Positions 5,657-37,900 of a DNA stretch of 64,000 bases are shown here, piece after piece. The stretch lies in the NCBI GenBank assembly GCA_965235115.1, contig OZ249447.1, positions 19,158,001 through 19,222,000 of the forward strand, written 5' to 3'. Origin of the DNA: Laetmonice hystrix (Eukaryota). Position 1 is the first letter of the stretch. The number at the start of each line of letters is the position of its first letter. The notes beneath the pieces were generated by a model that was not told the origin of the DNA, did not search any database, and was given only the letters and a program-made list of their open reading frames with translations. Both the position numbers and the translations under genes were made by a program.

Positions 5657-5787
5657 GGCGGAATTGTCTCCCAATAATTATGCAGTGAAAGTTCCGAGAC
5701 ATGATGTGAGGACCTGTGGCGGATTACGAGTGCCTTGACACGGTAATATCGACATGCTATTTACGATATCCAGCCCCAAATCTAATG

Positions 5788-12112: not shown

Positions 12113-12437
12113 GCACACACAAAAATCCCCATCTGGTCCAAGAACACACAAAAATTCCCATCTGGTCCAAGGACACACCAAAATTCCCATCTGGTCCAAA
12201 GACACACACAAATTCCCATCTGGTCCAAGGACACACCAAAATTCCCATCTGGTCCGAGGACACACAAAAATTCCCATCTGGTCCAAGGACACACAAAAAT
12301 TCCCATCTGGTCCGAGGACACACGAAAATTTCCATCTGGTCCAAGGACACACAAAAATTCCCATCTGGTCCAAGGACACACAAAAATTCCCATCTGGTCC
12401 AAGGGCACACAAAAATTTCCATCTGGTCCAAGGACAA
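12113..12437. repeat. 29-bp minisatellite, about 11 copies
   Basis: Unit acacaaaaattcccatctggtccaaggac. Confidence 0.95.
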
Positions 12438-13500: not shown

Positions 13501-13779
13501 TAACGGTAAGCCATAATTATTGTCATTTCTGAAAACGCCCCAAACGGCACGCCCAAGGGGGTAGGTGCGGGAGGGGGGATATGCCCCTCCTGCCCCAGAA
13601 AAAATTGAAATTAAGGGTTGTCTTGGATGCATTCTGAGCACATTTTGGTCGGGAAATGGCGATACGGTAAAGAGTTTGCGTAAAAATTGTTTTGCGTAGT
13701 ATATGAAGGACTTAAGGCACAACAACTCTCATATATACAAATTCGTATTCGTATATGAGAGAAAAGAAATTGCACTAAC

Positions 13780-13906
13780 CGTTTTCGTTGAAGGCAGAAA
13801 CACCAACAAGTGTCTTGTCTTTGTCGAGGATGTCTATGCATTGGGCCATGAAGATAAGAAAATCTGGGGCCAAAATAACTTCTTCTTCCAGAACGATCAC
13901 ATGAGT
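13780..13906 (-). CDS. GT13 exon THVIVLEEEVILAPDFLIFMAQCIDILDKDKTLVGVSAFNEN
   Basis: ctccaccag / gttagt; 127 nt; aligns with POMGNT1 VVLEEDLDIAVDFFSF...CISAWNDQG. Confidence 0.9.
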
Positions 13907-16900: not shown

Positions 16901-19900
16901 AAGAGACATATGATACAAAATAGCACTATGGTTCATCTGTGAATGACAATGGCTCAAGCTACGACTCAGAAAATGACAAACAAGGGACCCTTGCTTTTCA
17001 TCCACACCACAACAAGAAACCTGTGACCATATGGTCATAATCTCACACTATGCATGTTTTATACGGAACAAGTTTCTCTCCTTTGTCTGTACCTATTATA
17101 AGCAGAAGTTATGAATCAATTTGCGCTTGGCTTCAACTGAACACTTCAACTTAACCGCAAACACTGTATCATTGCTGTAACCAGGTATTGGTAGCTCCAC
17201 AACTCCAGTGAACCAGTCAGATTTTCAAGTACTCGATTTTTTATCTCATTTTACCCAGAGATCTTAGAAACATATCAATAAACTTCTCAATAAACAAATT
17301 TAGCATTCCTTGTCCATTTCATTTAAACTTGCATACACTTACACCAACAGAGAGACCATTTACTACATTTTTTAAGGTACCTCTACTCAACGGTATACAT
17401 CACGTTAAACCTGCTTTTCCCGAGTTCCTTGAAGGATGTTCCCAACCACTTCTACAGATGGGTCTTGGCCAATAATTTTGCCCCATCTATCGTTGGATAC
17501 TTACATACATACTTTGTGGAGCTTGAGAGCTTTGCTGTTTTGAATGTAAAGAGTTCTGCAAGTGCTGCAGATTCGTCAAACTTCTCATCATACATCACCT
17601 AAAGATAGCAACGTTTTCAATGTGTCAACTTTCTTCATCAAATATCACTAACCAGGTCACCTCAATGAGTAAATTAACCAAAATTTGTTACTTTTAAGAG
17701 AACATTTTTCACTTTAATGAAATTTTAGCCTCCTTACACTCCTGTCTGTGATAAAGAAAAAAAGGCAGATATAATTGTCTCCGACTACTATAGACGTAGG
17801 ACATGAGAAACCATGAAGCAGGAAAAAAACAACCCTTTACCATGACCATATCAGGCTTGATTCCAGGCTGCATGAGAACGGTCTCCAACTGCATCCTTAC
17901 AGCATTGTGGTTCAAACCTACGACAATACACAAATCCACATTTATCTCAAACTCTAAATCAAAGTGCAAGTCATTTTCAAGTTTGATCAAATGTTTTTTT
18001 CTAAAATGAATTTGTGAAAAGACTTTATGGATCTATAAAATAAAAAGGGTTAGAAATATTTTCTAAAAGCACCTGTGGGCTGCCCTAACGGTGGGGAAAG
18101 TGCTAAATATTCTTTATTAAAACCGTTATACCCGGTGCAGACATACTCCCTGTCCCACCTGACAGTTAAATTGTCCCAATATTTAGAAAACAGCCTCTGG
18201 CAGAGAGACAAGGGCACCATTTAGTTACCTGGAATGACGATGATGGGAACTCGGAAGATTCTGTGAGTTTCTAAAGCCTTGTCTGTCAACGGTGCAGACA
18301 TAAGGGCATCGTCGATATGCTCGGCTGTGAAACAAAGAACAGGAACATTTCTAAAAATATCCTGACAAAGACCCAGAGAACACCTTGCCTTGTACGGACT
18401 GCTGAGTGCCGATATCGTAATAAAAGCTAAATATCACACGTTTTCAAAATTCCTTTGACAGGCCATCGAGTCATTTTTGACACTCATGAACGAATTGAGG
18501 GTGATTTTCCTGGTAATCTTTTTGTTCTTTAGCATGTCATTTTTTCCAGTAATTATCTAATTAAAATAGCCATCTTCACTGCATCTTCACCCTATTAATT
18601 AATTCAATGAGATGCACTCTGACAGGAAATCAAATTCTTTTGTCCGAGATAATAAATCTGAAGACAAAAATTCTACAAGATCTCTCCATATTTAAACACA
18701 TTTAGTATTCAATATCCAAGACTCACCTTCGCAGAAATCACCGTATCCATCGTACTTTGCGCAGAACTTTCTCCGCTTCTCATTCTTGTTGGCAAGAGGA
18801 TCTGGCTTAATTTTGCTTCCCTTCACTGCAACAAAATATGTAAACCATTTGGGACGACGTGTATTATAAATGTGTTAGTAGTGTAAAATATAGTTTCCTT
18901 CATGCCGATGTGTATCACCAACCTGTACCAGAAATGAATTAGACATTTCCATTTATACTTTGGCATGCCAAAAACTATAATTTCTCACGTTTTGACAACA
19001 TTTTGAGGATGCCAAACTGCGCCTGGCAATGCCTTACCAACACGTTTATCTCCTCAGACTGAGATTCTGGTCGACCAACTAAAATGTCCATTTCACGGAG
19101 TTTCTTGTTAAGACATAAGCCAAGTTTCGGAGTACGAATAGAGGCGAGCACTCTACACCTGGGCCCGGTTCCTAAAATCTTAAGATCTAACTTAAGTTCA
19201 GGCTGGTGCTTCTGAAGCTTCTGATTGGCTGGTAAGCAGACCAGCCAATCAGAAGCGTTAAGCCTAAACTTAAGTAAGATCTTAAGATTTTAAGAACCGG
19301 GCCCTCCTAAACTATCCGGCCCCGGTTTCAAGCACGTGGTTAAGTTAACTACCAGGTAAGTTAGTTGGTTAAGATGAATTTGAACCAGAGATTTAACCAA
19401 TAAGGAAAATGAGAATAATAACCAATCTTGGTTAAAGTTAGAGTTAACCACAATTTTAACCACAACTTAGTTAACCTGGTTCGTGCACAGGTTGCTTCAG
19501 TCGCAACAAACCGTTACTTTCAGTTATTATGTAGCGTTTCTCCCTGTGTAAGTTACCACCTCAGACTCTAACAAATCATTAGTGGACAAAAATGGCCTCC
19601 AAACACAAATTATTATAAATGGATGGACTCGCATGGAAAAGAATTTCCCGTGTTATAGATTTAAATCGCAGCCAATTCCAGTTCCTACCTTTTTAATAAT
19701 TTTTCTTAATCGCCTTGATCCGATTGAGAAGGAAGGCATTGGATACTACATCAAGGTAATTAAGCAAGACTGGCACCAACTTATGACACTGATCACGATC
19801 GGTGTACCGGCACACTTCCCAGTATTTTGTGTTCCACAAACGAAATTCATTAATTTCATGCCATCTGAGGCAAGCCAAGTACATTCAGTACTCGCAGGGA

Positions 19901-22900
19901 TTCCTTAATGACACAGAGCTTAAATTAACAGATGCAAAATCCCACATGCAAACAATTGACTTTGAAAGGTCTAACATCATAATGTGGGACTTAAGGTTCC
20001 TCCGACTTCAAAATATTTCATGTATCTCTTAGATTCACAGGTTTTTCACTAGTTAAAATATAATGAATACCCTCAAGGAAGAGATTTTAAAATACCACAC
20101 GTCTCAATGACATCTGTTAAGTAACCTTAAGGAAAATTTTCAAACTGCTACTCAACGTAAGTATTGGAAGAGCTTCGGTTCGTTCTTTAGAAAGACTTAC
20201 ACCTTAACGGACAAAACACTGGAACATTTCTTGTTAGTCAACATGAACAAACAAACCAAGTTATGAAACGCATTACAATCTTAAAAAGCAGCAGTAGTTG
20301 TTAACTAAAGAGTAAATAAAGCTAAGACATCCATTCCATGAACGAATACGCTTCCAAATGAACTGTATTGACACCAGGTCATTTGGCCTAGCTTCAATAC
20401 GTATGATTTCAATGAGAGGTCAAGTACCATGTGAAATTTCGAAATCTGGCATTTCACCTGAAAATGTTGGACAAAATACACGTTACCAGGTGCAAGGACA
20501 TCAACTGTGAATGTGTCAGACGCCTGTTAGAGTTCCTGCCAACATGATTGTTAACCTCATAGTCAAGCATTGTTTGCCCTCATTTGAAGCTCCACTATTA
20601 CTCCGAGAGCGCCAATTCATGGCCCCACCAACCATCAGACAATGCACCATTTGCCCTTGGCAAATACATGTACCTTCCTCCACTCACCAAGCAAAACAAA
20701 ACCAATTAATTTGGTGCTCATGCTTATACCGAAAAAAAAGGTAAGTAAAAATCACCATTCTGCGGATAGCATTCAAAATAAGAATACAAAATGCAGTCAT
20801 CTAAACAAAAATTACTGTCCACCACCTACATGGAAATAAGCAAGGACAAAAGTTTCCATTTGGCTTGAAGGTGCCTGGTTTCTCTTCATCTCTTCGGCCA
20901 AATGCACCTTCCCCAAGCACATGGCGGCTTGCGATGAATCGTTCATATATATCTCTGAGCAAGCATTACCCACCATGATTTTATGGATGATCTTTAAAGA
21001 TGCTCTGGCCACCACATGTGTTTGTATCAAAACATCAAAGTTTCAAGTGCTTTCTGAAATGTGTTTGGTTTCTGTTTGCTTTCTTTGAACACTACCTATA
21101 AATGGCATCAATCAGAGAGGTCGCCTCTGGGGCCCAAAACCAATAAAAATACACTAAACCCAGGTACTTGATGTCATTCGTTGATGCGGCATTTGCCTCT
21201 TACATCATTATGGTTGGTATCTGGTTCAGGATGCCAGGTAAAAATATAAATGTTTTGTTACCTGGTGCTCCACTTATCAATATTCTATGCATTCATAGAA
21301 GTATTTCACAACCCATATAAAGTGCAGTTTCACCTCTTGTTGCCGTCTTATAAAACGACTCTTTTGAACAAAATCGATGCCAATTACTATAAGTGGATAA
21401 AAAGTAATTTACTCGTTACACAATACGGCAGATCTTTAAAATTCGTCTCCCTTCACGTTTTCTTCCTCCTGCCTTGAATTTTATGGTACCTAGCAGCGAA
21501 GTCTCAGGCCAACCACATTCACAGGTGAAGTGAGTTCCAACACGCAGATTGTGTCATTAGTTTATAGTTTTATAAGCTCCTACCAGGGGGCGCATTGGTG
21601 GAAATGTGATCTCTCTGAAATCAGACTTACTTGTGGTGGCTACACACTGTCTTTTATCAATAGGCGTTGGCCATCCACGTCCCCCTAATCTTGTTTCAAT
21701 CTGTTGTTGCCGGACAAAAACAACATACTCCGTTCAATATTGCGTTGTATACGGTTGACCCATCCATGGTCCACGGGTGGTACCAGCAATAACCCCTGCC
21801 AACCGCTGCCGTACACACCTCATACACTAAGCAGGACACGTCATACTACACAGTAACACTAAAAACATCCAAATCGGACTTGCAAAGAACACATTTTCCT
21901 TTTCCTCTCTGATTTCCAACAAATTAACCAAAATGCTTTAGCAGTGCGAGGTTTTTTGTGCAGCATTTGGAGTGGGTGAACTGTCCAGTACCCATGTTTT
22001 GTGCAGCGATACTTTTGACACGAACTCATGTTTAACCCTGACAAACATGCTCCAACAGAGTCCGCTGGGAGAAGGCTCACTGCACGAAACCACACCAAAA
22101 CATCGCTGGAAAAACAAAAATGCATCACCCAAACCGTCAGCTTCCCAATCAGTCAAATTTTAAAAACCTTTATAATATCCCCAGCAAAAAAGTGTTTTCA
22201 TTCAAAAATGACTCCACATTTTGGAAACCATAAAAGTTGTATGATGAAGATAGCCTTTCTTTTGAGTATGCTGCATTTTTGTTTAACCACCAAAAAAGTA
22301 TATATTGTACTGATAGCCACTGCTATCCACTATAACTTACACAGGTATGGCACACACATTTTCTTGTCAACGGGTTTCGGGAAGGAAGACGCTGGACCTG
22401 CAAATTCAATCTGAAAACAACGGCAGTAAACGGTGTTAAGACCTGACCCAAGATCAAACTGAAGGGGGAAATTTCTCATCCTAAAAATTGTTTCAGATTT
22501 TAAAAATTCAGGCGGTCAGGTCTGATTATGGGCTATACAGGGTGTCCCAGACTGAAGGGTTCGGGTAGACTCATTTCTTCACGAATCTGCTGCCTTTCTC
22601 AACTTCAGAAGCAGGATTTGACCTTCCTGGACAAGTTACTGTACCTCCTTAACGGCATGACTGGTATTGATGAAATGAAGTCTAATTTACACAATGATAT
22701 CCTATTATATTCACTGAAAAAAGGAACTTCAAATTAAACCCTTCTTCTGGGATACCCTGTATACAGTAATCCGCATGCTGGTAAGTAGAATTAACAAAAT
22801 TAGGTGGTATCACTAATATAATACTAGATATAGAGGGAAAGACTGCAAACAACTGTAGACAGCTGCCACCTCTAATTCAACTTTTGACATTGAAAAGTGT

Positions 22901-25900
22901 CTTCTAACTGTAGTAAAGAAACTAATGTTTTGGACAAAATATAATAACAATACTTATAGGTAGGTGGCATGCTTAATCTATCATTTAGTGGCCACAGCTA
23001 CCTAACTACTTACTTATCATATATACATGTACGTAATATCACATGAGCAAGTATTCTAATGAAACCTCACATGTGCTCTGTGAAATATAAAAAAAAGTTC
23101 ACTAAGAGTCTAAAATAACCACTGCAACAAAAATACTCTATCGTTCGAATCTGAGTAGAATCTCTTATTCTGACATTCCAGAATAAATAACCACTGGGTA
23201 CATTCCTTTCATTCAACACAAAACGACAATGTTCTGAACGGAATCCATACCAGCTTACTGACGGCAGGAATGAAACACTATACTAGAGCTGCGGTTACTG
23301 TCAAACCAAAATATCAAGTCCAGAAAGTTTCATATTATAATTAAGTCAAGTCACATTCAGAATACATGAAACAATATAACAAAGCTTCCAACTTTTTACA
23401 GAAATAATAAATACCAGAACAGTGTATGTAGTGTCGTCATTTTAACATGTGTAAAAAATTCCCATTGCAAAATAGTCCGTTCAGAAACATCGTCAAACAA
23501 CAAAACAAGAAGACATGATTGCAGGACTTAGTGAAACCTCTGTGAGCCGAGCTCGCTCTTTCAAAATATAAACACGTTTTTGCTGAAACTTAAGCTTAAC
23601 TTTGGTTGATAAAACTCCGTAGCAGTATACCGGTTCGTTGCTTCATTGGCACAAACTCGTCAGTACAGAACTACAATACGAGTTATAGCCCTCGTACTTC
23701 TCCACTATTGTCAATTTATATCATTCAACAAATTCAGGTCAAAGGAAAGACTTGGCAGCTAGTGTTCCTCCCATCATATTCTACTCTAGGTTCTAAGGGC
23801 GAATTTAATGTTTGTCATGCAGATGCCTTATTTTACGAAAGTCACACTAATATCATCCGCTGAGTTTCTAATTCCGGCTGTGCGTGAAGAGGACTTAAAA
23901 ACACCAGGATTTACAAATGGGTCCAATGAGGATAACGATTACAATCTTACCTAAGAAAAGCAAACTTAAAGAAAGCCCCAACCCAGCACTTCTCCACGAT
24001 AAAACCAATGAAAAAAAGGATTAAGGACTCTCTCTGGGACAACTCTTGCATCAGGAAAAGGAGAGGCGGGACAGAATACCGAAAGCCGTAAGAAATGATG
24101 ATTCACGAATATCAACAGAAACGGCCAAACCAACTTATCCTTAACCACCGTCAGACTTGCACCAGTCCTGTTGAGGAATAATTTTGCTTTGGCAGCCATG
24201 CCCGCCCCACCAACTAAAAAACAAAGCCATGACATCATCACCTTACTCTACCCNNNNNNNNNNNNNNNNNNNNNNNNNNNNNNNNNNNNNNNNNNNNNNN
24301 NNNNNNNNNNNNNNNNNNNNNNNNNNNNNNNNNNNNNNNNNNNNNNNNNNNNNNNNNNNNNNNNNNNNNNNNNNNNNNNNNNNNNNNNNNNNNNNNNNNN
24401 NNNNNNNCCTCTAAATGTCAGCCAATCTGTTACTGCATGGGCTTGACTTGAATAGAAGGCCTCCACACAACAACACACCAGGCCCGTACCTAGCGGTCCC
24501 CCCCCCCCCCCCAGTAATCATGGAGAAAAATGCCCTTTTCAAGACTGTCAATTCATCGTTGTAATCAGGGTTCCCTTCTAAACCTAGGTCTGCCCCCCCC
24601 CCCCCCCCCCGAGCAATTTTAGGCTGCGTACGGGGTGGGTGGGTATTTGGGGTTTTACGCCTTGCAACAGCCAGGGTCATATCACGGCGGTGAAGATGAG
24701 ATGAAAGTCAGTTTTTCTTGGTGGAGGAAACCGGAGTACCCGGAGGAAACCACCGACCTTCGGGAAGGAACTGACTGACAAACCTTTCACACATGCAGCC
24801 CAGGCCGGGAATCGAACCCGGGTCGCAGCGGTGTGAGGCGATGGTCCTAGGTGTCATGATGGAGCCGACACCTTAGACCACTCGGCCACCCGAGGCCCCC
24901 CGGCTGCGTACGGCCCTACACACAAGACATGGCGACAGCACAATCTCCCAACCCACAGTTCTCACGCTCCACAAAGTGATGCACAACTAATAGAACGATG
25001 ACAACACCATGCATACAATGATCTAAACTCTCAACACTCAGATGGCTTCCGCCCACATGTGCCCTTACAGTAAAACTGCATATGTATCACATACAGAAAC
25101 GGGTGAAACAGGGGTGAAACAAGCGACTTTGAAATCCTTTCACTGGGATCAAGCACACTACAGCTAGACTAGGTGTGCACACAGTTCTTCAGCTTGCAAA
25201 GAAAGCAAATACAGTCGGGAGCAAACCTCAGTGCTTATAACGTCTTATCAATATCAAAGACCTGAATTCAGATGATTCAAATGTGCTTCAAGTAATCATG
25301 GCATAAATATTTCACAAACTACGCTCGGCGTATGTTCCTGACAATTTGGTAGAGAAGCATGAGGTAGCTTCCAACAATCAAATATGAAGCCTGAAAGTCC
25401 ATTCACGGCAACAAAAACAGCGGCCTAAATGATAAAAAAGGCGTGGCCCTGTGTTTATTATGGTGATCAAAGGTTCAGATTCGAATGCAACTTGCTTCTT
25501 CCACAAAGAGATACTGTCAAGGCAATTGCAAGACGTGTCAAGAAAAACCTTTTCAGATTGAATTCATCTAGTTTTGGCACGTAGTTCCTAAGGCAGTACC
25601 TGTAATAATATTCCTTAAGGTGTTTGCAATCTGAAGCAGTTGTCAGTACGAGTAGGAAAAGTTACATCTCTATATTAAAAGCACTGCCATGCAGAAGCCT
25701 AAGTTTCCCTAATTAAAGACCGCCCGCGACTATAAAAGCCGTTACTCCCAGCAACATGGCAGTCAGCACTCACGTTTGAACCCAACAACTCAACAACAAA
25801 CCGTCATCTCCCATTCTTGTCTCAATTTTTACTGGTTATATTCCTTCAAAAGTTTTGATATTTGTCACAAGTAATTGTGAACATGTGTAGCAGGTTATCT

Positions 25901-28900
25901 GCAATTTTCAAGAAACATAATGCATGAACTGTATTGATAAGAGTCATTTGAGTTTTGAAAGTAGGCCTATCTGTAACTGACGAGTTTGAGCACCTTGACA
26001 GGTCCACAGGGGTGTGCAGGCTTTCTTATAAATATAGCAGGGCCAGTGTGTATGTTTGCTCAGTGCAGCCCCGCTCACTGCTGCCCATCTGCCCACCTTA
26101 CACTCCCTATGGGGGCCGCATTAGACTGGACCAGTGGAGCAGGGCCAGCCGGGGTCAACGTTACCGGGTGGTAACGAATGCCGGCCTTTAAGCTATCCCG
26201 AAGATGCCTGCTCCTGATTTAACATACCTATATTATCATGTGGCTCTGGATTTAAACCCCGCAAAACCAAACAGCCGTCATCAGATCTGATTTAGTTTTG
26301 ATCTACCAGAGGATTCAAAGCAGTGTGTAATTTTGAAACAGTCCGACCTCATTCATCCGACCAGCTTGGTGCCACTTAAAATGTGTTTGGATTGTGAAAC
26401 ATACGGAATGCGGAATCATTATAAATAGAAAATGGTAGAATAGGTTACCAGAAAGTGTTTTCAGATTGTGATGTATATAGATTAAAGAAACAAGGATTAA
26501 CGAGGTATGACCATACTAACACTAAAACGCTCATAGAAGGTTTCCCTGGAAGTTGGATCGACATTTAATTCTTTGTTCGCACTACTCTTCAACTATTTCT
26601 TGCACCTAGATTAATGTGACGTTGACTTAAATCTCTTGAACTTATTATGACATTATGTATTCCGAGCATATTCCAATTTTCCCCATGAGATGACAAAATC
26701 ACAACTCGTAATCCTGGGAGGGCGGAGGGGGTCAATTACAGTCGAAATCAGATTTTGCAAACCAAACAATGCAAGAGAAAGTAGTGGTCAATTTGGGTGC
26801 TCGGCATGCCAAGAATACCAACTGCAGGAGGAAGTACGCCACTGGTATCCTATACAATGTGAAGAACACTGTTATTCATGGCAGCCTATTTCAATGTATA
26901 AATTACCTTTGTTGTTTCTCCAATGACCCAGTGAAGGCCGTATTATCCGTACACTTTGCTTTATTAATCATTTATATAATTTATATTAAGCTAGAGAACT
27001 AATATGGTGATCTTTGTCTAATCAAAATGTTATAGCTATGTGTACATTTATTCAGGAACGTAAGTCCCGTCAAAAAACATTCCTCATTATTAATACCTAG
27101 GCTTCTGAGACCCCATATGTCTTCCATGTGACTCAAAACTAGATTTAAATCCTTCAAACTATTCAGTGAAATAAGTTGTAGAAAACATGAGTCGGGAGGC
27201 AGAGCTTATGAAATAACATTTTAAAGCATGTTAGTAGAGGTAAAAACGAAAAATATCTATTCTATAGTTTATCTACACTGCATCCATCATGCTCCACGGA
27301 AACATGCTACGTGAAAATAGGGACCTAATATACAATTCTGTGATCTACATAAATTCATTCCCCATAATATAGAGGCCTAGATTCTTATCAAAAAAATATT
27401 TCTTAAAAAATCATCATTGCCTTAACAAACAAATTCTATATAATAATATCGAGTAGTACATTTCCAATAAGGGAATATTATGAATTAATGGACATCGCTA
27501 CGTCAAGCGGAAGACGAACTTCACCATGCAACGCGACAAGCCCAAGACAACGTTCAATTCACCTGCTCAATCTCTCCAAACCCGGATATGCCCTTCTGTC
27601 CAACAAACACCCACGTGTCACGGAACTTGACATTTTGGATCATGCCACTGCCCAAGTCATTAAACAACTGCTTGGCGTGGTCTGACAGCCTGCGGAAACA
27701 AAATCACACTCTGTCGTAGTAATGAGTTCAACGATAGATTCAACCCGTTTGGCGGCTGCAATGATGAGAAGGGCCTTTCGCCAACAACCTCGCGGTCGCT
27801 GAGAGTTGGTTCAATAACAGCTCTGTAGGTGGCGCCCGTTTGTTCCCCCTTTCCTTCCTTGATCATAGAGGGCAGCACTGAATGAGTGAAATGGTCACGC
27901 CGCCAATGCAAAGCATGGCTCACATTTAAGACGTTACAAACACAAACCTAAACATGTTACATGTAATCTGAAAAAACTGAAAGGAACTTGGCCGTTTTCC
28001 CTTTCACCATACTGATTGAGGAAGCAGTGATTTCCCCCCTCTAAATAAGTCTTATCTGCCCGATTCTTCTCAGTGTAGATTTCATTCCGCGTTCGCGAGT
28101 TGATTATCTGCTACCCTGGCCTGACTGAAGTATGTACTAGGAGGAAAAATGACAAGTTTGAGATGTTGTTGAAGCTGATTCTGAAAGCGTGGAGAAAAGT
28201 GATTAGTTCAATCCACGAGACGCGGATATAAGCTCAAAGCTTCACCTGATGCAGGGTGAGAACACGGCAAAATGTTGCATAAAGGGAAGTTCCCAGGCCT
28301 GTAGCCGCTGGAGGAGGGGGGGGGGGGGACCTTTTCATGCAAACAAGTATGCCAACTTGGCATTTTTTATTGCAGGGCAAAATATCCTTCAACAGAAGAC
28401 CTGGTTAAGGTCCACTTTTTCTAAGATACCGAGAAATAGCCGAATTCTTTAAAACGGTCTCCTTTTCCTCAAGACAGCTTGCCCCATTGAAAATCATGGC
28501 TACAGGCCTGGTTCATGACAGTAGCCGAGGTAGTTGGAGCTGTACCTCTATCCCCACACATAGCTCTATCCACACATACAACAAAACAGTGACCTTAGAT
28601 TAGGGGGAAAACGATACAAAATGAATGACCCATCCGAATGACCAGAACGTTCAATCTAAAACATCGCAATGACCTTCCAGAGGTCAGTGGTGTACATTTC
28701 ACAACCTGTCGTCTGCTTGTCGCATTGTGAACGCCAATGTATTTTCAATGGAGATTTAACGCACAACAGGTTAACAGGTTGTGAAACGCACCTCTGAAGT
28801 GCCATCTTACGTTATTCTGTATGTCAGAGACCACACAACCTCTGTGAATTTATCAGTTCCAGGGCCCGGTTTTTAAAACATTTGCTTAAACTTAAGCTTA

Positions 28901-31900
28901 AATATGGCTGCCCTTTGCTTACCTGAGCATTTGCTTAAGTCCGGTTTTTAAAACCTTGCTTAGGCCTTGCTTACGTAAGATCATCACGGAAACGAGAAGA
29001 GCTGTTCCATGAAGAATCAGAACCCCCCAGTAAAGGCAATGGGAAAGAGGGACAGGTGGCAGTATTTCAATTTCTGGTGGAGTAGGCCTAATGATGCTCC
29101 AAAGAACTGTTGATACTGATGAAAGTGACCATTCGGTGCTCATGATGCGCCAAATTACCGGGAGTGGTGGAGGCAGGTTTATATTATTTACCGTCAATGG
29201 GACGGGTGCAGATTTTGCCTAGAATGGCGTAAACTTGACCCAATTTTACGCTCGATTATAGTTTACGTCACAAACGACAATGATTGTGCTCAACTGTGAC
29301 TGGCATAGATTTGACCCTGACTGTGACGTTTTGACAGTGGCTTGTTTAGACGTCCCGTGGAGCTTTCTTTCACCACAAACACCCAATAATGAGACTGGCA
29401 TCACGGTAAACATGATCTTGTCTTTGCTATCCTATACATTTAAAGTGCTATTTATTTGAAATTATCACTCTACTGTGTAGTCTTTATTGGGGACTCTGTC
29501 TTGCTTAACTTTTAAGTCTGGTAGGGAGCTTGCTTAAATCTCACACTATTTAAGCTGAAGCAAGCTTGCTTAAGTGGTTTCAAAAACCGGCATAAGCAAG
29601 GTCTCTTGCTTAAACTTAAAGTTAAGCTTAAGCAAGCTGCTTAACTTGTTTTAAAAACCGGGCCCAGCTTAGTTCTTGCTTCTTTCCCTTTAGCATTATG
29701 CGAAATACCAGGAAAGGTACAACTCTTGAAACAAAAAACAAAACAATAAGAAACCAAAAAAAAATCGTTCTGGTTGACATGGGACGGGTCAATCATTAAT
29801 TTGCGGTGGTGACCTTAAGTTAAACTTAACCACAGTGACCTCCATTTTAACCTGCCCATTAAAAGTGATTGGGACGAGACAGTCTACTGTGCGGACATGC
29901 AACGCAGGCCTGCGTGAACCTGTAGGTTGACTACATAATGTTACAATTGTTTTACACAAATGAGGTCAGTCCGCCTCTGAATTAAGAGACTTCAAAACTT
30001 AAAGATTTTGGGTTTTGCCTTCAAACGTAGAACGTGGGAAGAATTAGGCTTCTTGAGCCTGACGACAGAGGTAGGTCTCGCGTTTCTCTCCTTACATTGC
30101 TCTGTCCGCATAGTCATCTGCGTTAAAAACCTACAACGATTTCTACACAAGTTTGTTTTCAGCACCTCTTCAAATGTGGAGTGGCCATCAATGCCTTTCT
30201 GTCCAGCAAACACCCACACGTCTCGGAAGGTCAACTTGTCGATCATTGTACTACCAAGCGTCTCAAACAACTTCTGAGCATGCAACTTGAGACTGACAGA
30301 GCAGAGAGAAAGAAATAAACAATATTACATTATACATTTCACCTTATTGAAGGCAGAACACGTACAACATTCAGATAAATCTGATTTTATACAATACTTT
30401 CTTAAAGAGTTCTGGACCAGAGGAATAGATTCTATTACTAAATAATTGTTGTACCTTTTCTTGTGAAGCCTACACAAATATCACAAAAGCATAGACACCA
30501 GTAACTATTTCAACAAGAGAAATACATACATGTATGTATAGGAAAATAGAATGACGCCAACTGCCGTTTTTTCATGTTTACCTTTGACAGGCGTTGAGAA
30601 TTACTGTTTTTCTTAAAATGTATCATCAATTTTCAATACCGTCACAAAAGTCATCAGAAAATGTCATATTTTTATAAAGGGATCTAAAGACCTACTTTCC
30701 CTGTAATAACGTCTGATATACGGTACTTGGCAAGTTAATCATTACATCATTTACTTGGGAAGACATGCATAGATAGCGATGACTTACTTTTTCGAAGCAT
30801 CATCATGGACAATGGCCAAGATGATTTCTTTGTCCTTCATCATCTCTAGGAAGATCTCTAAGTTGCTACTGTCTGTAAGAGAACAAACGCAATCTTTGTT
30901 CTCGATGCCTAAAGATAATACCTCATCAACTTATTAATGAATCAAATTTATTAATTGATTACGAGTAGGCCTACATACAAATGCCTGAACATTTACCAGT
31001 TCTCAACTTCTGACCTTCGATATACGCGTACTATATTAGAAAAACTTCCACTATACACATGTTGACGGGTCATGAGGGCAATTGGATACCCTTAGGAAAT
31101 ACATTGATTTTGGGGTGAACAACATGCGTGGGGAATCGACGTATGCTGTTGCCCGAATTTGATTCAAAAACATGACGCCTAGGAAGTACTGACAGTACAT
31201 GTGCCATCAGTAAAGGGCCATGTACGCATGCGCAATGACCTATAAATGACCCAGACAGGGATCACTTCTCAAAATTTTGCCTCACCAGAAAATAGCGGCG
31301 TGGAACAGCATTAAAATGAATCATAGCACACGACAATTTACCGGTGTGACCAATCACAACACAGCAAAAAGATGAGCTGTGTTATAAAATAAACTCTGGT
31401 GCATCAAGGTAACGAGTAGGAATTTAAATCTGAAGATCATTTCAGAAGAAAATATTGTTCTCTGTGTGAAGGAAAACTTAATGGTGTCTGGTTACTTCTA
31501 TCAATGCATCTGCATGCAACATAAAGATATCATAGATCACACAATACAATCCTGTCTGCACTGATGTTCGCAGTAATCTTAGGGCCGGGGTTCGATTCCT
31601 GTAGAGGACTATACAACTTTTCTCTTTAGGGACATTGTCAAAGTAATTGGGTTACCCCTGATGCCCGTGCATTTCAAAAGAAAAACACAGCAAAAAGATG
31701 AGCTGTGTTATAAAATAAACTCTGGTGCATCAAGGTAACGAGTAGGAATTTAAATCTGAAGATCATTTCAGAAGAAAATATTGTTCTCTGTGTGAAGGAA
31801 AACTTAATGGTGTCTGGTTACTTCTATCAATGCATCTGCATGCAACATAAAGATATCATAGATCACACAATACAATCCTGTCTGCACTGATGTTCTTCCA

Positions 31901-34900
31901 CTGTAGACTGACATTCATACGTTCTCAATTTTCAAATATAATATTTCTGTGAGCTGCACTCATTGAATGGAAACATACCTTCAGAATATGTATCGAAGTG
32001 ACCCACTCTGACCACCTCCTTCTTCTTGGGGTCAACAATGACGATGTTGAATCCTCGACCTCCGTCGTTCAGACCATTGGCGATGACACTAACCAGACAA
32101 AGCGCATTGTTAGAGATGTTTATTTCAATTCTATAAGTCACGTTTTAAACAGCTCGTGACATCTACGGAATATAGACCCATAAGGGGCAGACCATTTGAT
32201 AACGGGGGGGGGCTATGGTTTCTTCATTAGCAAACTTTTTTTTTGCCCCCAGGCCGAAGCTATCTTTTTTTTAAGCATTTTTGACCATTAAGCATTTTAT
32301 GTAGCAAAATTTCCCAAAATCTTTCTATCACTCCCTGCATTTTTGAAAATGTGTGTACAAATGCTTGCAGTGCGCAGTGAGGCAGTTGGAGCAACTTGAC
32401 TATTAACCAAAAATATTACAAAGCTTGTGTTTTACAAATGACTGACTACTGAGTAGGACCTTAAACGACGTGCCCAACTTCGCCGTTATTATGAGTCAAT
32501 CAACATAGGGTAAACCGTTGTGAGAATACTATGTACATTTCTGTGCAGTTAGCATGAGACAGAAGCAGTTTTGGAATGGAATATGACATATCCCTCCAAG
32601 ACTTTTTCCTCAGATATTTAGACTTTCGGACCGGATTGTGCACGCGAAGTCAATGCGGTGGGTATCAGGTATGCCCTCTGCCTATACCAATATGTTTCTA
32701 TGGTACTCTGCCAGCTGAATTGACTCACTATTTGCCATTGACGCAGATCTTGGGGCCATCGCTGTTCCCCTTGCCAGTGTATAGGTGGACGGGGAAGGAA
32801 TCGATGCTGCATCCCTTAGGGATACCACAGTTTGCAAACATTTCTCCCATCTTCATCTCAGTCTGTTCCTCCACTTGTGGTTTCTTCACCTCCACCTTGC
32901 TCAGGCGACCCACTGATAATCACAAACGATACTAAACAACAAACTCGACAACAAAGTCAGGATATGACCAAATAAACGGAAGTATTCTGATAAAATTTCT
33001 CTCAGTACAAGTTTCATGCCATAATACAATGACCCATTACTGGGGTACAAGGAGAGCAAAAATAAATATCACTTTTATGATACATGTATACATTGTATAT
33101 GATAACAGATCTATTAAGATAAATAATTTTAAACAGTAAAATTAGTTGTTATGATAATCAATGTCACTTTCCTGTAGAACTTACTTTTTGTCTCCACAAG
33201 TTAAACATGTTGAAATGGGACGGGGTAGGGGTGGGGGGTTCTTGCTGTTAATTCTTTTTATCATGAATAGCACCAGGAATCAAGGAAAAGTATTTTAAAC
33301 GTCCATATTTTGGTAACTCAGAACACCAAGCAAACCTTCTTAGCTTATAATGTCAGGAAAAAGGTTTGGGATCTCAATTAGAGTTTTAATATGACTACCT
33401 GTACTCAAACACGCCTTAGTAATAAGTACTGTAAAGTGAAACAGGAAAAGGGATACAAAATCACCAAAGCTGGAAAATGTTACGAAACTAACACCTCTAC
33501 ATTTTATACAATCATTTTAACCGATGAGCCTTATTCCTAAGCCAGTCCATTCACTCGGGACTTTAGACAGTATCCACTGACATCGTAAAACCCCTTCGCA
33601 CGTTAGCAGACCACATGCAAACGTCAGCAAATGACCAAAGGCTAAAACCGTACTGTAATACTGAGTGAAATTGCCATCCTGCAATCTTTTCCCCCATAAA
33701 TTCTTCTCCTGTGTGCGCCTTACGGGAAAAATCCATTCACAAACTGCAGTGATCATTGCTCTCTAGCTACGACATATTCCTCTGTAACATCAGCTTTTGT
33801 CACTTGTTTGAAGCAATGCAAAATGCGTTCAGAGTTGGTCTTATGCCCTACTTTATTGACTTGATAGAACATTTTGATGCACCTTACAAGACCTGTCTAA
33901 CAATAGGCGTACTGCAGAACATACTGAAAATAGATCTTCACCTTCTAAGTGATAAACGAGAGCATGCTTAATATTCCTAGGAAAGTAAGTAAGAAAAAAA
34001 AATACAGAAAATTTGATGAATAATAAAATTGGGAATTTATAAAAAGGAGGCCCAGAAAATGTCAATAGGATCAGACGCAGATCCCTATTCCAATATTTGA
34101 AAAAGCTTCCTTGAAGGTTTCTAAATTTGCTTCTATCTTCTTCTGTATATATTTTGTACTAGTCGCCAATATGAATTATTCAGTCAACAGCATAGTATTT
34201 CTGCAGCTGTTTTCCACTTTAAATACTTACACGGGAAACTAAGGCAGCCGCTCAGCTCTACGGGAGTAGCGAAATCCCGGTTGGCACTGTGCTGCATCTG
34301 CAATCATCTAGCCATCAGCAGTGCTTCCCTCCGCCGCCAGGTGCGCGACAAGCGCGGAGTCGCGCTAACTATAACACCAGGGGGCAGACGAAACTCTAGC
34401 CTACAACCCACAGTAGGCCTCCTGCTGCCCCATGCTGTCTCAAAGGGTTCAGATAGATATCACCGAATCCAATGCACCGATAGTTAGAATGGTCAGAGTC
34501 AGACATGTTTCACAAAATGTTCGCGTCAGTAATGCAAACACAATTTTTATCAGTATGGTCAGTTCAAGAGACCAGTTTCAATTCAGGTGGCGCCACCTGC
34601 ATGATTCCGTCGAAACTTCAATGATGTGCCAAGCCAGCCAGAGGTGTTGCTGGGTGCGCAAATCCTGAGCAGTAATGAAATTTTGAGCTTCCTCCTCTTA
34701 TATTTGTAACCACCATGAAAACGCTACTTGCAGTTGTGTGGTAAATTTTCGAACAAGAGCTGATTCTACTGAAGGGGAGCCTTTCAAGTAGATGTATAGC
34801 CGAGAGGTCTGGCTTGGCAACAACTGATTTTGAGCACCCCCCCCCCCCCGCCCCCCCCCCAAGTTTAGGTTATTCAACAAACGTGTCTGACTCTTCTCCG

Positions 34901-37900
34901 TGAAAAATGTGCAGACATACACCATCCTCATATAAAGTGAAAGATTGAAAATCTGCCACGTGACTTTTCCATTCTGAGTTATTTCTAAGATTGATTTTCT
35001 ATGCTCGTCCTTCTTTGTGAACCTACTCACAAACACCTTCCAAATGCAATCTAGGCCGCACATGTTGATTGTTAATCTTTCACTTTCTTAATCAGTAAAA
35101 ACATACAAAGGGAAATGTTAATAATCATGCCCCTCGGAATGTTGGAGAAGCAAGGTCCCATGCTTTGGAGTCAAGACCAGTGGAAGGATGGGAAATACTT
35201 CACCGCTAGGGGAAAGCACCAGCCTGCTGCCAGGTGGCGCTGCCCTGAAGGCGCCACTTACTGGGAAAGGCTAAACATCCAGATACCTCCGCCGAAGGAG
35301 CAAAGTCATTATTATCTCGTGGTACGAGCTGTAGGTGCAGAATTTGACCAAGTTGGGTTAATTTCAAAACAAAATAGTCTGGTATAGAAACAAGCTTGTG
35401 AACAATCATTTGTTCATGCATTCCGTTTCTTCTTATACAAATGTTTCTCAAACCCTGGCATAAAATCACATGTACTTGACCTTTTTTGGCGATATAAGGT
35501 GGCAAATTACATTATTTTTTTTCAATAAAAAGTGGGTGTATGTTTATAACACCATCAGGGTGCCCAGCAAACACAAAATATTTTAGGATATTTAGGTTAC
35601 AATCTTCCATCACCATCACTTTTTAAAATATCCAGTACATAATGTTTATAAACAAATATCAGATACAAACAGCCAAAATGCATTTAAAGTTAACATTACC
35701 TTAAATGTACAATCATCCCTGAGTAATAATATATTTATTAAGTACTTTTATCAGGAATTGACTCTATGGGTCCATGTAATGTCTCATATCAGCACATACA
35801 GACTTAGAAAAATGTTCAAATATAGGAATTCATAGGAATTTTCTCGAAATATAGGAATTTATACGATGGCAATAAAAATATAGGAATTATAGGAAATGTA
35901 TAGAAGTGCTGGGCACCCTGCACCGTATAATACCATATAGGATTGACGTTTTGGCATTGTGATAATAAACAATCAATGAATTTAGGATAAAGTATTATAC
36001 ATCAAGGTTTGACAAAGATTAGCTTGAAGAAAAGAACAGGAGTGGGCCAATCATTGACCGAGTGCTCTCCCTGATGACAGCCTCCTGATAAGGTTTCATT
36101 ATCCCTCCTGCAATTTATTGTCCTTAACTTCAACAATTTGCCCATAATCAAAATGGTTTTTTTTTAAACAAAGTAAAAGGGAATATTTGTGTAAAGGTGA
36201 GAAATAACACCCCCCCCCCCCCCCCCATTCCTCCTTCTAAAGGTGTAGTAAAAATCAGCTTTTTTCCTAGACACAAACTACATACGTAATTTATATACAA
36301 TGTACCTTCAGTCGGCTACTGATATCAATCTAGGGCAAGTACTTCTGATTCTAATAAACAGGATAATAAATTATTTCCAGCTATATTGATCCCAATAAGC
36401 ATGTGTTTTCTTTAATAATACATTGTTGTACTGAGATACCACTGTGTAAATGATCAAACAGGGCTTTTGTTCCAGATAGCGTAACGCTAGCCTAAAGAAA
36501 TTAGTAAACAAAAACCCTTAAGTTCAAGCAATTGTTTTGTTTAAAATCTTACCATTTCACAAAAATCACTCTTAAGTTACTACAGATATGTCAATCAAAT
36601 TACATTGTAATCTATTCTGCTAATATGCTTTTTCATTTTTGGAGGCATACGACTCACCTTTTCGATGGCAGAACCGTGTGTGAGTCCTCGTTGACCGACC
36701 ATCACAAACGCATCACGAAATTTAAGTTTCTTGATAACACTGCTCCCATACTGACTCATCCACTCTTTTCCATCATCTTTCAAGCTGAAAATGAAACCAC
36801 AGTTCTGGGACTTGCAGGTGGGAACTATCAATATTTTATTGACTATACCTGTGGTTCAAAAATCTCGAAAGATGGGATTTTGCCTTATCCAGGTCAAATT
36901 ACCTTATACAGAAGGCTGCAGAATATCCATCAAATAAATCCCCCGAGGCGATAGAATCAACTCATTGGAAAGTAAAGCTTATGTGTACAATGTTCATTAC
37001 CAAACGCATTAATCCTTTAAAACCCTTTTACTTTCGATTTTTGTTATCCAGACCGGTTATATGATAAAGCATTATGAGGCAGTAAGTCCCCACAGAGTTG
37101 ACGTCTCAGACGTATCTACTTACTTATAGCTGGCCTCGTCCATACTGGTGGCCATGATGACAAAATTGTCTTCGACGCCCAGTTTCAAATATCTTACTAA
37201 TGCACTATCTGTAACAGGTAAAACAAACAGGGCTCTGAGAATCTTGACATGATGTGAAAATATTTAACATTGTTATCTACTTTTTACTATGGCATACTTG
37301 AATCATCATTATCTGATATCCAACTATGGTACATTTCACATAACACTTTTTTAGTACCAGTACACCTACTTTAGTATCAAGCGACTCATTTCATGAAGTA
37401 CCGGGGGTATGTATTTAGCTACTTTAGTATCAAACGACTCACTTTCATGATATTTACAACAATGATTCTCACCTTCTACATATGTATCAAAGTAGCGAAA
37501 CTCTACTACTTGATGAGTTTTATCTGAAAAAGCAAAACGTATTATGTGGCATCAGGATAGTCTTTTTTAACAACACAAGAGAACATAATGACAGGATTGT
37601 CCCCTACCAGTATCAATCAGCCTTACTCATTATGTAACCTGGAGTTCAATCAATCACCAATATAGGGCTGGACAGTCTCATGTCCTACATATACAAATGA
37701 CGTAAAATAGCCTCAAACCACTTCGCTTTGGGGACAACAAAATGTAAATTTCCCATAGGTTTGACATAGGCTCAGTGGATACACTATATAAAATCAGGCT
37801 GTATTGTAAGAATCTTTTTACATGTAAATGTACCTCTTCATTCGATAAACTTGTTAGTTTTGTACGGCTCAAAACTCAAAGTGCCCTTCTTGGGGAGTAA

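What the first reader, a model, noticed from the sequence alone, without database searches (positions are those of the whole stretch)
27563..30292. Mutually exclusive paralogous exons swap part of the sugar-binding ILEI domain
Two 127-nt exons with identical phase (2-0) lie 2.5 kb apart, are both open, share 23/42 aa and differ at many synonymous sites (e.g. TTC CGA/CGT GAC, CAG AAA/AAG GGC ATT/ATA). That pattern suggests an old duplication kept under selection. Including both gives a stop after 9 codons of exon B (AVRPRQAVV*); skipping both gives a frameshift ending in TGA at the start of exon 18825. Only one-or-the-other yields protein. Both keep the FRD motif, whose Arg contributes to GlcNAc binding in the human POMGNT1 stem (established knowledge), while neighbouring residues differ. 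The inference is two isoforms with different glycan recognition. I know of no mutually exclusive splicing described for FAM3/POMGNT1-type domains.
Basis: partly seen in the sequence, partly recalled or inferred. Interest (0 to 1): 0.8.

Follow-up and report, generated by a model that had tools for sequence, protein, structure and literature searches.

The report
Alternative exon pair in FAMP-1/POMGNT1-like lectin domain
A worm (annelid-like) gene for a POMGNT1/FAMP-1-type glycosyltransferase has two old, intact, interchangeable copies of the exon that builds one third of its sugar-binding pocket. The same pair is kept in distant annelids and a brachiopod, so the gene very probably makes two versions of its lectin domain, but no RNA data were available to show this.

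Summary
Exon A (30292-30166) and exon B (27689-27563), on the minus strand, are both 127 nt. Both have AG/GT borders, the same phase, 23/42 identical residues and an ILEI Pfam match. A+B together, or neither, gives early stop codons.

The gene has a membrane anchor, two FAM3/ILEI domains and a GNT-I domain, like C. elegans FAMP-1. The pair encodes the C-terminal part of the second, sugar-binding ILEI domain, including the Arg that aligns with human POMGnT1 Arg207.

The same A-then-B pair occurs in a metagenome scaffold from a relative, in Ridgeia, Dimorphilus and Owenia, and in the brachiopod Lingula. Between the window and the scaffold only the two exons still align. Synonymous sites are saturated but amino acids are kept (pN 0.11 for A, 0.05 for B). 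mRNA contigs or gene models of other species use an A-type or a B-type exon, never both.

No RNA run of this species could be found, so alternate use is inferred, not seen. A difference in glycan recognition is untested.

I also found two more same-size, same-phase exon pairs in this gene, of 67 nt and 70 nt.

The scan has noted mutually exclusive exon pairs in other genes of this genome, but not this one. Verdict: a real, old exon pair of the mutually exclusive kind, and a new member of a known kind.

The parts
30166..30292 (-). Exon A: the upstream copy, 127 nt. First base is T (junction codon AAT = Asn). Encodes LKLHAQKLFETLGSTMIDKLTFRDVWVFAGQKGIDGHSTFEE.
   Evidence: open frame with AG/GT borders. 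Pfam ILEI, E 2.8e-7. A-type orthologues in L006 (81% aa), Ridgeia and Helobdella.
27563..27689 (-). Exon B: the downstream copy, 127 nt. First base is G (junction codon AAG = Lys). Encodes LSDHAKQLFNDLGSGMIQNVKFRDTWVFVGQKGISGFGEIEQ. This is the form most like orthologues in other phyla.
   Evidence: ILEI, E 9.5e-9; 84-98% identical to relatives P0001 and P0003. B-type exons in L006, Ridgeia, Owenia, Lingula, Lineus and Patella.
30788..30872 (-). Single-copy exon E10 upstream of the pair, 85 nt, ending in AA|GTAAGT. Carries the equivalent of Asp179 (..VHDDASK).
   Evidence: the Asp is invariant.
31979..32088 (-). Exon E9 of the second ILEI domain. Carries the GRG arginine, equivalent to Arg129.
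32729..32912 (-). Exon E8, the start of the second ILEI domain (Cys-rich N-terminal part).
22341..22410 (-). Exon D1, 70 nt, phase 0 to 1 (IEFAGPASSFPKPVDKKMCVPYL). Encodes the last strand and a conserved Cys of the second ILEI domain. Closely resembles the single exon of Ridgeia.
21631..21700 (-). Exon D2: a candidate alternative copy of D1, also 70 nt with the same phase and AG/GTAAGT borders (IETRLGGRGWPTPIDKRQCVATT). It is more divergent and was seen only in this window.
   Evidence: (HMM E 0.05).
18727..18825 (-). Next single-copy exon (E13), 99 nt.
35262..35328 (-). Exon E7a, 67 nt: linker between the two ILEI domains (LVPRDNNDFAPSAEVSGCLAFP). Candidate alternative partner of E7b.
34231..34297 (-). 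Exon E7b, 67 nt, same phase as E7a (MQHSANRDFATPVELSGCLSFP). 11/22 residues identical to E7a.
36658..36784 (-). Exon C: the paralogous 127-nt exon of the first ILEI domain. Single copy here.
13778..52624 (-). The part of the gene inside the window: membrane anchor exon (~52624-52532), ILEI domain 1 (40245-36658), ILEI domain 2 (32912-21631), and the start of the GNT-I catalytic domain (18825-13778). The rest of the catalytic domain lies beyond the window's low end.
   Evidence: GNT-I match; remaining exons at C13:19113741-19144457.

Best explanation
A and B are a tandemly duplicated exon pair that is spliced in an either/or way. The gene has the domain order of C. elegans FAMP-1 and human POMGNT1: a membrane anchor, two FAM3/ILEI domains and a GNT-I catalytic domain.

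Each exon encodes the same 42-residue piece of the second ILEI domain. In the predicted fold that piece is a helix, the turn before the FRD motif, the FRD arginine (equivalent to human Arg207, one of three GlcNAc-binding residues), the following strand and one more short strand.

One mRNA can carry only one of the two. With both, exon B is read out of frame and stops after 9 codons. With neither, the frame shifts. Such transcripts would be expected to be removed by nonsense-mediated decay. How the spliceosome is steered to one exon is unknown.

The result is two enzyme versions. They share the binding residues (Arg, Asp, Arg) but differ at type-specific positions, chiefly the residues just before FRD (I-[D/S/E]-K-L-[S/T] in A, I-Q-N-[V/L]-K in B) and position 37 (H/K in A, F/Y in B). 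I infer that this retunes what the lectin domain binds, either a glycan or a partner protein.

Shown: the anatomy, the frames, the conservation, the selection on both copies, and the place in the fold.
Inferred: alternate use in this species, and any functional difference.
For: - Anatomy and frames.
- Both exons match ILEI. A model of the domain from relative P0001 has pLDDT 86 and TM 0.82-0.90 to FAM3C and 0.68/0.83 to the POMGnT1 stem. The exon maps to model residues 125-166.
- R70, D119 and R147 are invariant in 14 orthologues of both types. Their spacing (49 and 28) matches human R129, D179 and R207 (50 and 28) (PMC9802357).
- The same pair, in the same order, is open in: scaffold L006 (A 81%, B 90% aa), Ridgeia, Dimorphilus (a very compact locus, copies only about 430 nt apart; its A copy has a GC donor), Owenia (A copy 124 nt) and Lingula (A copy 130 nt).
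- A-type exons begin with T or C (Asn junction) and B-type exons with G or A (Lys junction) across species.
- Between the window and L006 only the two exons align (79% and 78% nt); the introns do not.
- Window vs L006, pN/pS is 0.11/0.66 for A and 0.05/0.92 for B. The binomial test gives P = 1e-6 and 2e-12.
- In the tree, A-type exons of the window, L006, Ridgeia and Helobdella group together (13 rows, SH-aLRT 80). B-type exons of annelids, Lingula, Lineus and molluscs group together (52 rows, SH-aLRT 84).
- mRNA-length contigs or gene models use A-type (P0175, P0152, P0153, Ridgeia P0155, Helobdella P0008, and Lingula P0123, which uses its A-position exon) or B-type (P0001, P0195, P0151, Owenia, Lineus, Dimorphilus). 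None has both.
- No polymorphism lies in either exon, against 25 in the flanking introns.
Against: - There is no RNA evidence from this species. Two run searches returned only DNA runs.
- No single species in the data shows transcripts of both types. Isoforms would be merged in the 90% protein clusters, and the clusters I opened held none.
- Helobdella keeps only the A type, and Lineus and Patella only the B type, so one version can suffice.
- The binding residues are identical in A and B, so the biochemical difference may be small or may not concern sugars.
- Support values on a 42-column tree are modest, and the Owenia and Lingula A-position exons are not resolved into the A clade.
- No intronic pairing element that could enforce the choice was found.
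Confidence: 0.8

Rival explanations
1. Both exons are used alternately, but the swap has no effect on ligand recognition. The two copies are kept by subfunctionalisation of expression (tissue- or stage-specific splicing), or they tune folding, stability, dimerisation or contact with the catalytic domain rather than sugar binding.
For: - The Arg-Asp-Arg binding residues are invariant in both types.
- Lineages with only A (Helobdella) or only B (Lineus, Patella) exist.
- FAM3C forms domain-swapped dimers in crystals (PDB 5lc4 among the hits).
Against: - Type-specific residues are strongly fixed. Q18-N19 is found in 28/28 B-type exons, K19 in 11/12 A-type exons, and an aromatic residue at position 37 in 28/28 B-type exons.
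- The most diagnostic of these sit directly before the sugar-binding arginine. That pattern is more what is expected of functional specialisation than of drift.
Confidence: 0.25
2. One of the two exons is an unused relic of the duplication (a pseudo-exon), and the gene makes a single protein.
For: - No RNA data are available for this species.
- The closest full-length relatives P0001, P0195 and P0151 show only the B type.
- Donor GTGCTG of exon A is weaker than the consensus.
Against: - Synonymous sites between the window and L006 are saturated and the introns cannot be aligned. Even so, both exons keep their length, frame, splice sites and 81-90% of their residues.
- Both copies also persist in Ridgeia, Dimorphilus, Owenia and Lingula.
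- A-type exons are used in mRNA contigs and gene models of other species.
Confidence: 0.06
3. The two exons belong to different transcription units, for example a nested or alternative-promoter transcript that uses one of them with other exons, rather than to an either/or choice within one mRNA.
For: Nothing specific. The large introns (2.5-10 kb) leave room for other transcripts.
Against: - Both exons have the phase and borders needed to fit between the same two neighbouring exons, in every species examined.
- The whole genome holds only these copies.
- Orthologous mRNAs place either type in the same position.
Confidence: 0.03

Closest known systems
C. elegans FAMP-1/M70.4 (PMC9802357)
   Same: - Same domain order: two N-terminal FAM3-like (ILEI) domains followed by a GNT-I-like C-terminal domain.
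- In the worm the second domain (Fam3L2) binds GlcNAc and mannose and keeps the equivalents of Arg129, Asp179 and Arg207. The exon pair found here lies in that second domain.
   Different: - No alternative exon pair is described in that paper.
- Here the first domain's matching exon also keeps an FRD motif.
- The nematode catalytic domain is reported as barely similar to POMGnT1, whereas this gene's exons match Pfam GNT-I.
Human POMGNT1 stem domain (PDB 5GGF-5GGP) and FAM3A/B/C
   Same: - Same fold (Foldseek TM 0.82-0.90 to FAM3C, 0.68/0.83 to the POMGnT1 stem).
- Same three sugar-binding residues by alignment.
- In FAM3C the aligned sequence reads ...DDGATK followed by LNDEAR..., the point where the A/B exon begins here. 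Whether FAM3C has an exon border at that point was not checked.
   Different: - Vertebrate POMGNT1 has one ILEI domain, not two. I did not examine any vertebrate genomic locus, so the copy number of this exon there is unchecked.
- My paper searches found no mutually exclusive splicing described for this domain.
Classical mutually exclusive exon pairs from tandem exon duplication, for example coq-2 exons 6a/6e in helminths, annelids and molluscs (PMC7434440, title and abstract) and muscle myosin heavy chain clusters (PMC3912159)
   Same: - Adjacent homologous exons of equal length and phase.
- Conserved over long evolutionary distances.
- They swap a small piece of an active or binding site within one gene.
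   Different: - A different gene family.
- Splicing is not yet observed here.
- Exclusivity here can be explained by the reading frame alone (127 nt is not a multiple of 3). The intron between the copies is long (0.43-2.5 kb) and both introns are ordinary GT-AG, so steric or U2/U12 incompatibility mechanisms do not apply.

Membership tests
Mutually exclusive exon pair (tandem exon duplication) | Two neighbouring exons of the same length and phase, with no other exon between them | tested here: met
   Both are 127 nt (1 nt + 42 codons) and 2476 nt apart. The HMM scan finds no other gene exon between them.
Mutually exclusive exon pair (tandem exon duplication) | The two exons are homologous to each other | tested here: met
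   23/42 aa and 75/127 nt identical. Both match the same part of Pfam ILEI, profile positions 57-89.
Mutually exclusive exon pair (tandem exon duplication) | Usable splice sites on both copies | tested here: met
   Both have a polypyrimidine tract and AG, and a GT donor. The same holds in L006, Ridgeia, Owenia and Lingula. The Dimorphilus A copy has a GC donor.
Mutually exclusive exon pair (tandem exon duplication) | Including both or neither destroys the reading frame | tested here: met
   A+B stops after 9 codons of B. Skipping both gives stops with either D1 or D2.
Mutually exclusive exon pair (tandem exon duplication) | Both copies are kept by purifying selection in several species | tested here: met
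   The pair is present in five annelid lineages (counting the window's own species) and in Lingula. Only the exons stay conserved. pN is far below pS for both copies.
Mutually exclusive exon pair (tandem exon duplication) | Transcripts of one organism contain one or the other exon, never both | tested here: inconclusive
   No RNA run was found for this species. Across species, mRNA contigs and gene models carry A-type or B-type and never both. No single species was seen with both isoforms.
ILEI / FAM3 domain (PF15711) | Sequence match to the family profile | tested here: met
   Exons A and B are above the gathering score (31.4 and 36.1 bits against 27). The neighbouring exons match adjacent profile parts.
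ILEI / FAM3 domain (PF15711) | FAM3-type beta-beta-alpha fold | tested here: met
   Tested on the domain of relative P0001, not on the window's own spliced protein. pLDDT 86; best matches are FAM3C, FAM3A, FAM3B and the POMGnT1 stem.
ILEI / FAM3 domain (PF15711) | Carbohydrate-binding residues equivalent to human POMGnT1 Arg129, Asp179 and Arg207 | tested here: met
   They are invariant in an alignment of 14 orthologues of both exon types. Their spacing matches the human numbering (residues named in PMC9802357). Binding itself was not tested.
POMGNT1 / FAMP-1-type glycosyltransferase | N-terminal membrane anchor, ILEI stem domain(s) and a C-terminal GNT-I (PF03071) domain in one gene | tested here: met
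   The exon order on one strand matches full-length relatives of 810-880 aa. There is a GNT-I match at 13903-13778. The remaining catalytic exons lie downstream outside the window.
POMGNT1 / FAMP-1-type glycosyltransferase | Beta-1,2-GlcNAc transfer to O-mannose | not testable with these tools
   Enzyme activity needs an assay. The FAMP-1 paper states that even FAMP-1's activity is unknown.

The most novel reading that the evidence does not exclude
This glycosyltransferase carries three separate either/or exon clusters: E7a/E7b in the linker, A/B next to the sugar-binding arginine, and D1/D2 in the last strand of the lectin domain. Together they would allow up to eight isoforms.

The A/B switch has been kept since before annelids and brachiopods diverged. 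In this reading it gives two lectin domains with different glycan or partner specificity, so that one enzyme is aimed at different substrates in different tissues. That would be the first splicing-controlled retargeting described for the POMGNT1/FAM3 family.
Probability: 0.3. Interest if true: 0.75.

Novelty: new member of a known kind. Interest (0 to 1): 0.55.

Why it matters
In human POMGnT1 the stem (ILEI) domain binds GlcNAc-bearing O-mannose glycans and is thought to guide where the enzyme and its partner fukutin act on dystroglycan. In C. elegans the matching domain of FAMP-1 is needed for a neuronal behaviour.

A natural, conserved pair of versions of this domain would be useful for two reasons. 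The versions differ only in one 42-residue piece beside the binding arginine. They therefore point to which residues set ligand choice in FAM3-type lectin domains. The pair would also show that spiralian animals can diversify a glycosylation enzyme by splicing rather than by gene duplication.

It also adds a dated example (older than the last common ancestor of the annelids sampled, perhaps older than the annelid-brachiopod split) to the growing list of old either/or exon pairs in this genome.

Tried and rejected
- **RNA evidence.** The first used the intron-rich 27300-30900; the second used the exon-dense 31980-32913. Laying those runs confirmed the DNA but says nothing on splicing.
- **Isoforms in protein databases.** I opened ten protein clusters. 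None held an A/B isoform pair.
- **Short-query search.** A search with the 42-aa exon A found no candidates, because of the length window and word filter. A blank here means little.
- **More genomic contigs with A-type exons.** L011, L013 and L014 were too short to tell whether a B exon follows. The DNA of the 107-kb contig holding the 98%-identical B exon (P0003) could not be fetched.
- **Docking/selector RNA pairing.** A scan for inverted repeats from the E10 donor to D1 found only chance-level matches, a transposon's terminal repeats, and a poly-C/poly-G pair. With no close relative's introns to compare, nothing can be concluded.
- **Steric or U12-type incompatibility.** Rejected. The introns between the copies are 0.43-2.5 kb, and every donor and acceptor at the pair is GT-AG, except a GC donor on the Dimorphilus A copy.
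- **Assembly artefact.** Rejected. The copies differ at 41% of bases, and independent contigs cover both.
- **Literature.** The Kuwabara 2016 structure paper is not held. The three binding residues are therefore cited through PMC9802357.
- **Misreading corrected.** I first took the many 'LNDEARRLFEELGS...' hits for vertebrate POMGNT1. Their pattern matches the solved FAM3A/FAM3C chains, so they are probably FAM3-type.


Full report
**1. The observation**

On the minus strand, exon A (30292-30166) and exon B (27689-27563) are each exactly 127 nt. Each is one base that completes a codon, followed by 42 codons. Both are open in that frame. Both are preceded by a pyrimidine tract and AG and followed by GT.

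They share 23 of 42 residues and 75 of 127 bases. Ten of the 23 shared residues are written with different codons.

The upstream exon 30872-30788 ends in AA|GTAAGT. Exon A therefore gives an Asn junction codon and exon B a Lys junction codon.

If A and B are joined, B is read out of frame and stops after AVRPRQAVV. If both are skipped, a stop follows soon after.

Both exons match Pfam ILEI above the gathering score. The whole 627-Mb assembly holds only these two copies and a third 127-nt paralogue, exon C at 36784-36658, which does the same job in the first ILEI domain.

DNA contigs from three runs of one sample cover both exons. They show 25 single-base variants in the flanking introns and none in either exon. 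About 2.4 would be expected in the exons by chance, so this is only suggestive.

**2. The gene**

A profile built from exons A and B was searched against 1.8 billion protein representatives. It found 439 proteins, many of them 790-880 aa long with two matching stretches.

The best full-length relative is P0001 (862 aa, from an mRNA-length contig). Together with a profile of 24 orthologues, it lays out the gene on the minus strand as follows:
- a membrane-anchor exon near 52600;
- a first ILEI domain (40245-36658);
- a linker;
- a second ILEI domain (32912 down to about 21631);
- the beginning of a GNT-I catalytic domain (18825-13778).

The rest of the catalytic domain lies 14-44 kb beyond the window's low end on the same strand.

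The architecture with two FAM3-like domains is that of C. elegans FAMP-1. In that protein the second domain binds GlcNAc and mannose and keeps the equivalents of human POMGnT1 Arg129, Asp179 and Arg207 (PMC9802357). Earlier notes of this scan call the animal annelid-like. The relatives found here fit that, but I did not identify the species.

**3. Where the exon sits in the protein**

I modelled the second ILEI domain of relative P0001 with AlphaFold, using an alignment of 14 orthologues. The model has mean pLDDT 86. It superposes on FAM3C (TM 0.82-0.90) and on the human POMGnT1 stem (TM 0.68/0.83).

The A/B exon corresponds to model residues 125-166. That stretch holds a helix (127-135), a short turn (141-143), FRD (146-148), a strand (149-155) and a short strand (165-168).

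Three invariant residues of the alignment are R70, D119 and R147. They are spaced 49 and 28 residues apart. Human R129, D179 and R207 are spaced 50 and 28 apart. The numbering of the PDB chains also places the FRD arginine at 207.

The swap therefore replaces the piece of the pocket that carries the third binding residue, while the first two sit in single-copy exons. The next exon (D) adds the last strand and a conserved cysteine.

**4. Conservation of the pair**

I fetched genomic loci of orthologues and found the following.

| Species / locus | A-type or A-position exon | B-type exon | Note |
|---|---|---|---|
| Metagenome scaffold L006 (2.2 kb) | 81% aa to window A | 90% aa to window B | B lies 1.1 kb downstream of A |
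| Ridgeia piscesae | present | present | 1.5 kb apart |
| Dimorphilus gyrociliatus | present, GC donor | present | about 430 nt apart; very compact locus (gene range about 4 kb) |
| Owenia fusiformis | 124 nt, FRS instead of FRD | present | about 0.74 kb apart |
| Lingula anatina (brachiopod) | 130 nt; used in the annotated mRNA | 74% aa to window B | about 1.6 kb apart |
| Helobdella | single A-type exon | none found | |
| Lineus, Patella | none found | single B-type exon | |

In every species with a pair, the order is A then B, both frames are open and the phases fit.

A-type exons start with T or C, which makes an Asn junction. B-type exons start with G or A, which makes a Lys junction.

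Between the window and L006 only the two exons can be aligned, at 79% and 78% nt identity. The introns cannot.

Nei-Gojobori counts for window vs L006 are:
- exon A: pS 0.66, pN 0.11;
- exon B: pS 0.92, pN 0.05.

The shortage of amino-acid changes has binomial P = 1e-6 for A and 2e-12 for B. It also holds against Ridgeia.

A maximum-likelihood tree of 165 exon peptides puts the A exons of the window, L006, Ridgeia and Helobdella in one group of 13 rows, all with first base T (SH-aLRT 80). The B exons of annelids, Lingula, Lineus and molluscs fall in another group of 52 rows, all with first base G or A (SH-aLRT 84). The Owenia and Lingula A-position exons sit unresolved on long branches.

The duplication is therefore older than the split of the annelid lineages that carry typical A and B exons. 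It may be older than the annelid-brachiopod split, but independent duplications are not excluded there.

**5. Use in mRNA**

Splicing in this animal was therefore not seen.

Indirect evidence comes from mRNA-length contigs and gene models of other species:
- A-type: P0175, P0152, P0153, P0010, P0022, P0192, Ridgeia P0155 and Helobdella P0008. Lingula P0123 carries its A-position exon.
- B-type: P0001, P0195, P0151, Owenia, Lineus, Dimorphilus, rotifers and molluscs.
- None carries both.

In Ridgeia and Lingula the annotated mRNA uses the A-position exon, while the well-conserved B exon sits unused in the next intron. In Owenia and Dimorphilus the reverse is true.

I did not find one species with both isoforms. 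The protein collection merges sequences above 90% identity, and the clusters I opened held no such pair.

**6. Differences between the two types**

I compared 12 A-type and 28 B-type exons.

| Position in exon | A-type | B-type |
|---|---|---|
| 2 | N | S |
| 6 | Q | K |
| 10 | E or Q | N (25/28) |
| 18-19 | variable, then K (11/12) | Q-N (28/28) |
| 21 | mostly S or T | K or R |
| 37 | mostly H or K | F or Y (28/28) |
| 42 | E | Q |

FRD, W26, the G-Q-K-G stretch and E41 are shared.

Positions 17-21 form the turn just before the binding arginine. Fixed, type-specific residues next to a ligand-binding residue suggest specialisation. Whether the ligand, a partner protein or only stability is affected is not known.

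**7. Mechanism of exclusivity**

- The introns between the copies are 0.43-2.5 kb long, so steric blocking does not apply.
- All sites are GT-AG, apart from one GC donor in Dimorphilus, so a U2/U12 incompatibility is unlikely.
- No convincing competing RNA pairing was found.
- The frame rule (127 is not a multiple of 3), with decay of mis-spliced mRNAs, is enough to make the protein output either/or.
- Regulated choice probably also exists, but it is unexamined.

**8. More pairs in the same gene**

- E7a (35328-35262) and E7b (34297-34231) are both 67 nt with phase 0 to 1 and AG/GTAAGT borders. They share 11 of 22 residues (DFA.P.E.SGCL.FP).
- D1 (22410-22341) and D2 (21700-21631) are both 70 nt with phase 0 to 1 and AG/GTAAGT borders. 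They share 8 of 23 residues. D2 keeps the WP.PIDK..C motif of orthologues but lacks the conserved Pro after Cys-Val.

All eight combinations of the three pairs are open. Including both members of a pair breaks the frame (for D1+D2).

In Ridgeia, Owenia, Helobdella, Lineus, Lingula and Patella these two exons are single. These pairs are therefore younger or lineage-specific, and D2 could be decaying.

E7a, A and D1 resemble the Ridgeia protein. E7b, B and D2 resemble P0001. This hints at linked choices but is only a resemblance.

**9. Comparison with what is known, and novelty**

Mutually exclusive exons from tandem duplication are a well-known kind. An example conserved in annelids and molluscs is coq-2 (PMC7434440).

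My searches of the held papers found none for POMGNT1, FAM3 or ILEI domains. The FAMP-1 paper describes none.

Other agents of this scan have reported such pairs in other genes of this genome, including Pbx, NRF1, PRMT1 and AP-2, so the phenomenon is common here.

I file this as a new member of a known kind. It is of moderate interest because it touches the ligand pocket of a disease-relevant enzyme family and is very old.

**10. Verdict**

- The exon pair is real and both copies are functional coding exons (about 0.9).
- They are used alternately (about 0.8).
- The swap changes what the lectin domain recognises (about 0.3-0.4, untested).

Noticed in passing
window 35262-35328 and 34231-34297 (minus strand): A second same-size, same-phase exon pair (E7a/E7b) in the linker between the two ILEI domains. 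Each is 67 nt with AG/GTAAGT borders, and 11/22 residues are identical. The exon is single in six other species examined.
   Followed up: partly
window 22341-22410 and 21631-21700 (minus strand): A third pair (D1/D2) directly after A/B. Each is 70 nt with phase 0 to 1. D1 resembles the Ridgeia exon. D2 keeps WPxPIDKRxC but lacks the conserved Pro, so it may be a young alternative exon or a decaying copy.
   Followed up: partly
window 28859-29664: An 806-bp element in the A-B intron with perfect 19-nt terminal inverted repeats (28862-28880 and 29647-29665). It is absent from the contigs of runs X1-X3, which join 28858 directly to 29665. Word depth inside it is in the thousands. It looks like a polymorphic insertion of a high-copy MITE-like transposon.
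   Followed up: partly
L005 (Owenia fusiformis) 9120-9251 and 10456-10581: Owenia has two open copies of the matching exon of the FIRST ILEI domain (C-type). The same exon has therefore been duplicated again in another domain and lineage.
   Followed up: no
L015 (Dimorphilus) 2073-2199: The A-position exon of Dimorphilus is open and has an AG acceptor, but it is followed by GC instead of GT. This is either a GC-AG intron with a weak donor, as often seen at alternative exons, or the first step of decay.
   Followed up: no
L007 Helobdella; L008 Lineus; L010 Patella: Reciprocal single states. The leech keeps only an A-type exon; the ribbon worm and the limpet keep only a B-type exon. In Lineus the B exon is also fused with the next exon (no intron).
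   Followed up: partly
window 24586-24614 and 28307-28332: A long C-run and a long G-run on either side of exon B. On the pre-mRNA they could pair and loop out exon B. However, such runs belong to a repeat that is common in this window, so this may mean nothing.
   Followed up: no
window 38400-39715, 45000-47000, 12100-12480, 5000-5760: Several long tandem-repeat arrays in the introns and flanks. Their repeat units stay open in all three frames of the minus strand.
   Followed up: no
window 24254-24407: A run of 154 N in the intron between exon B and D1. It was left as it is.
   Followed up: no
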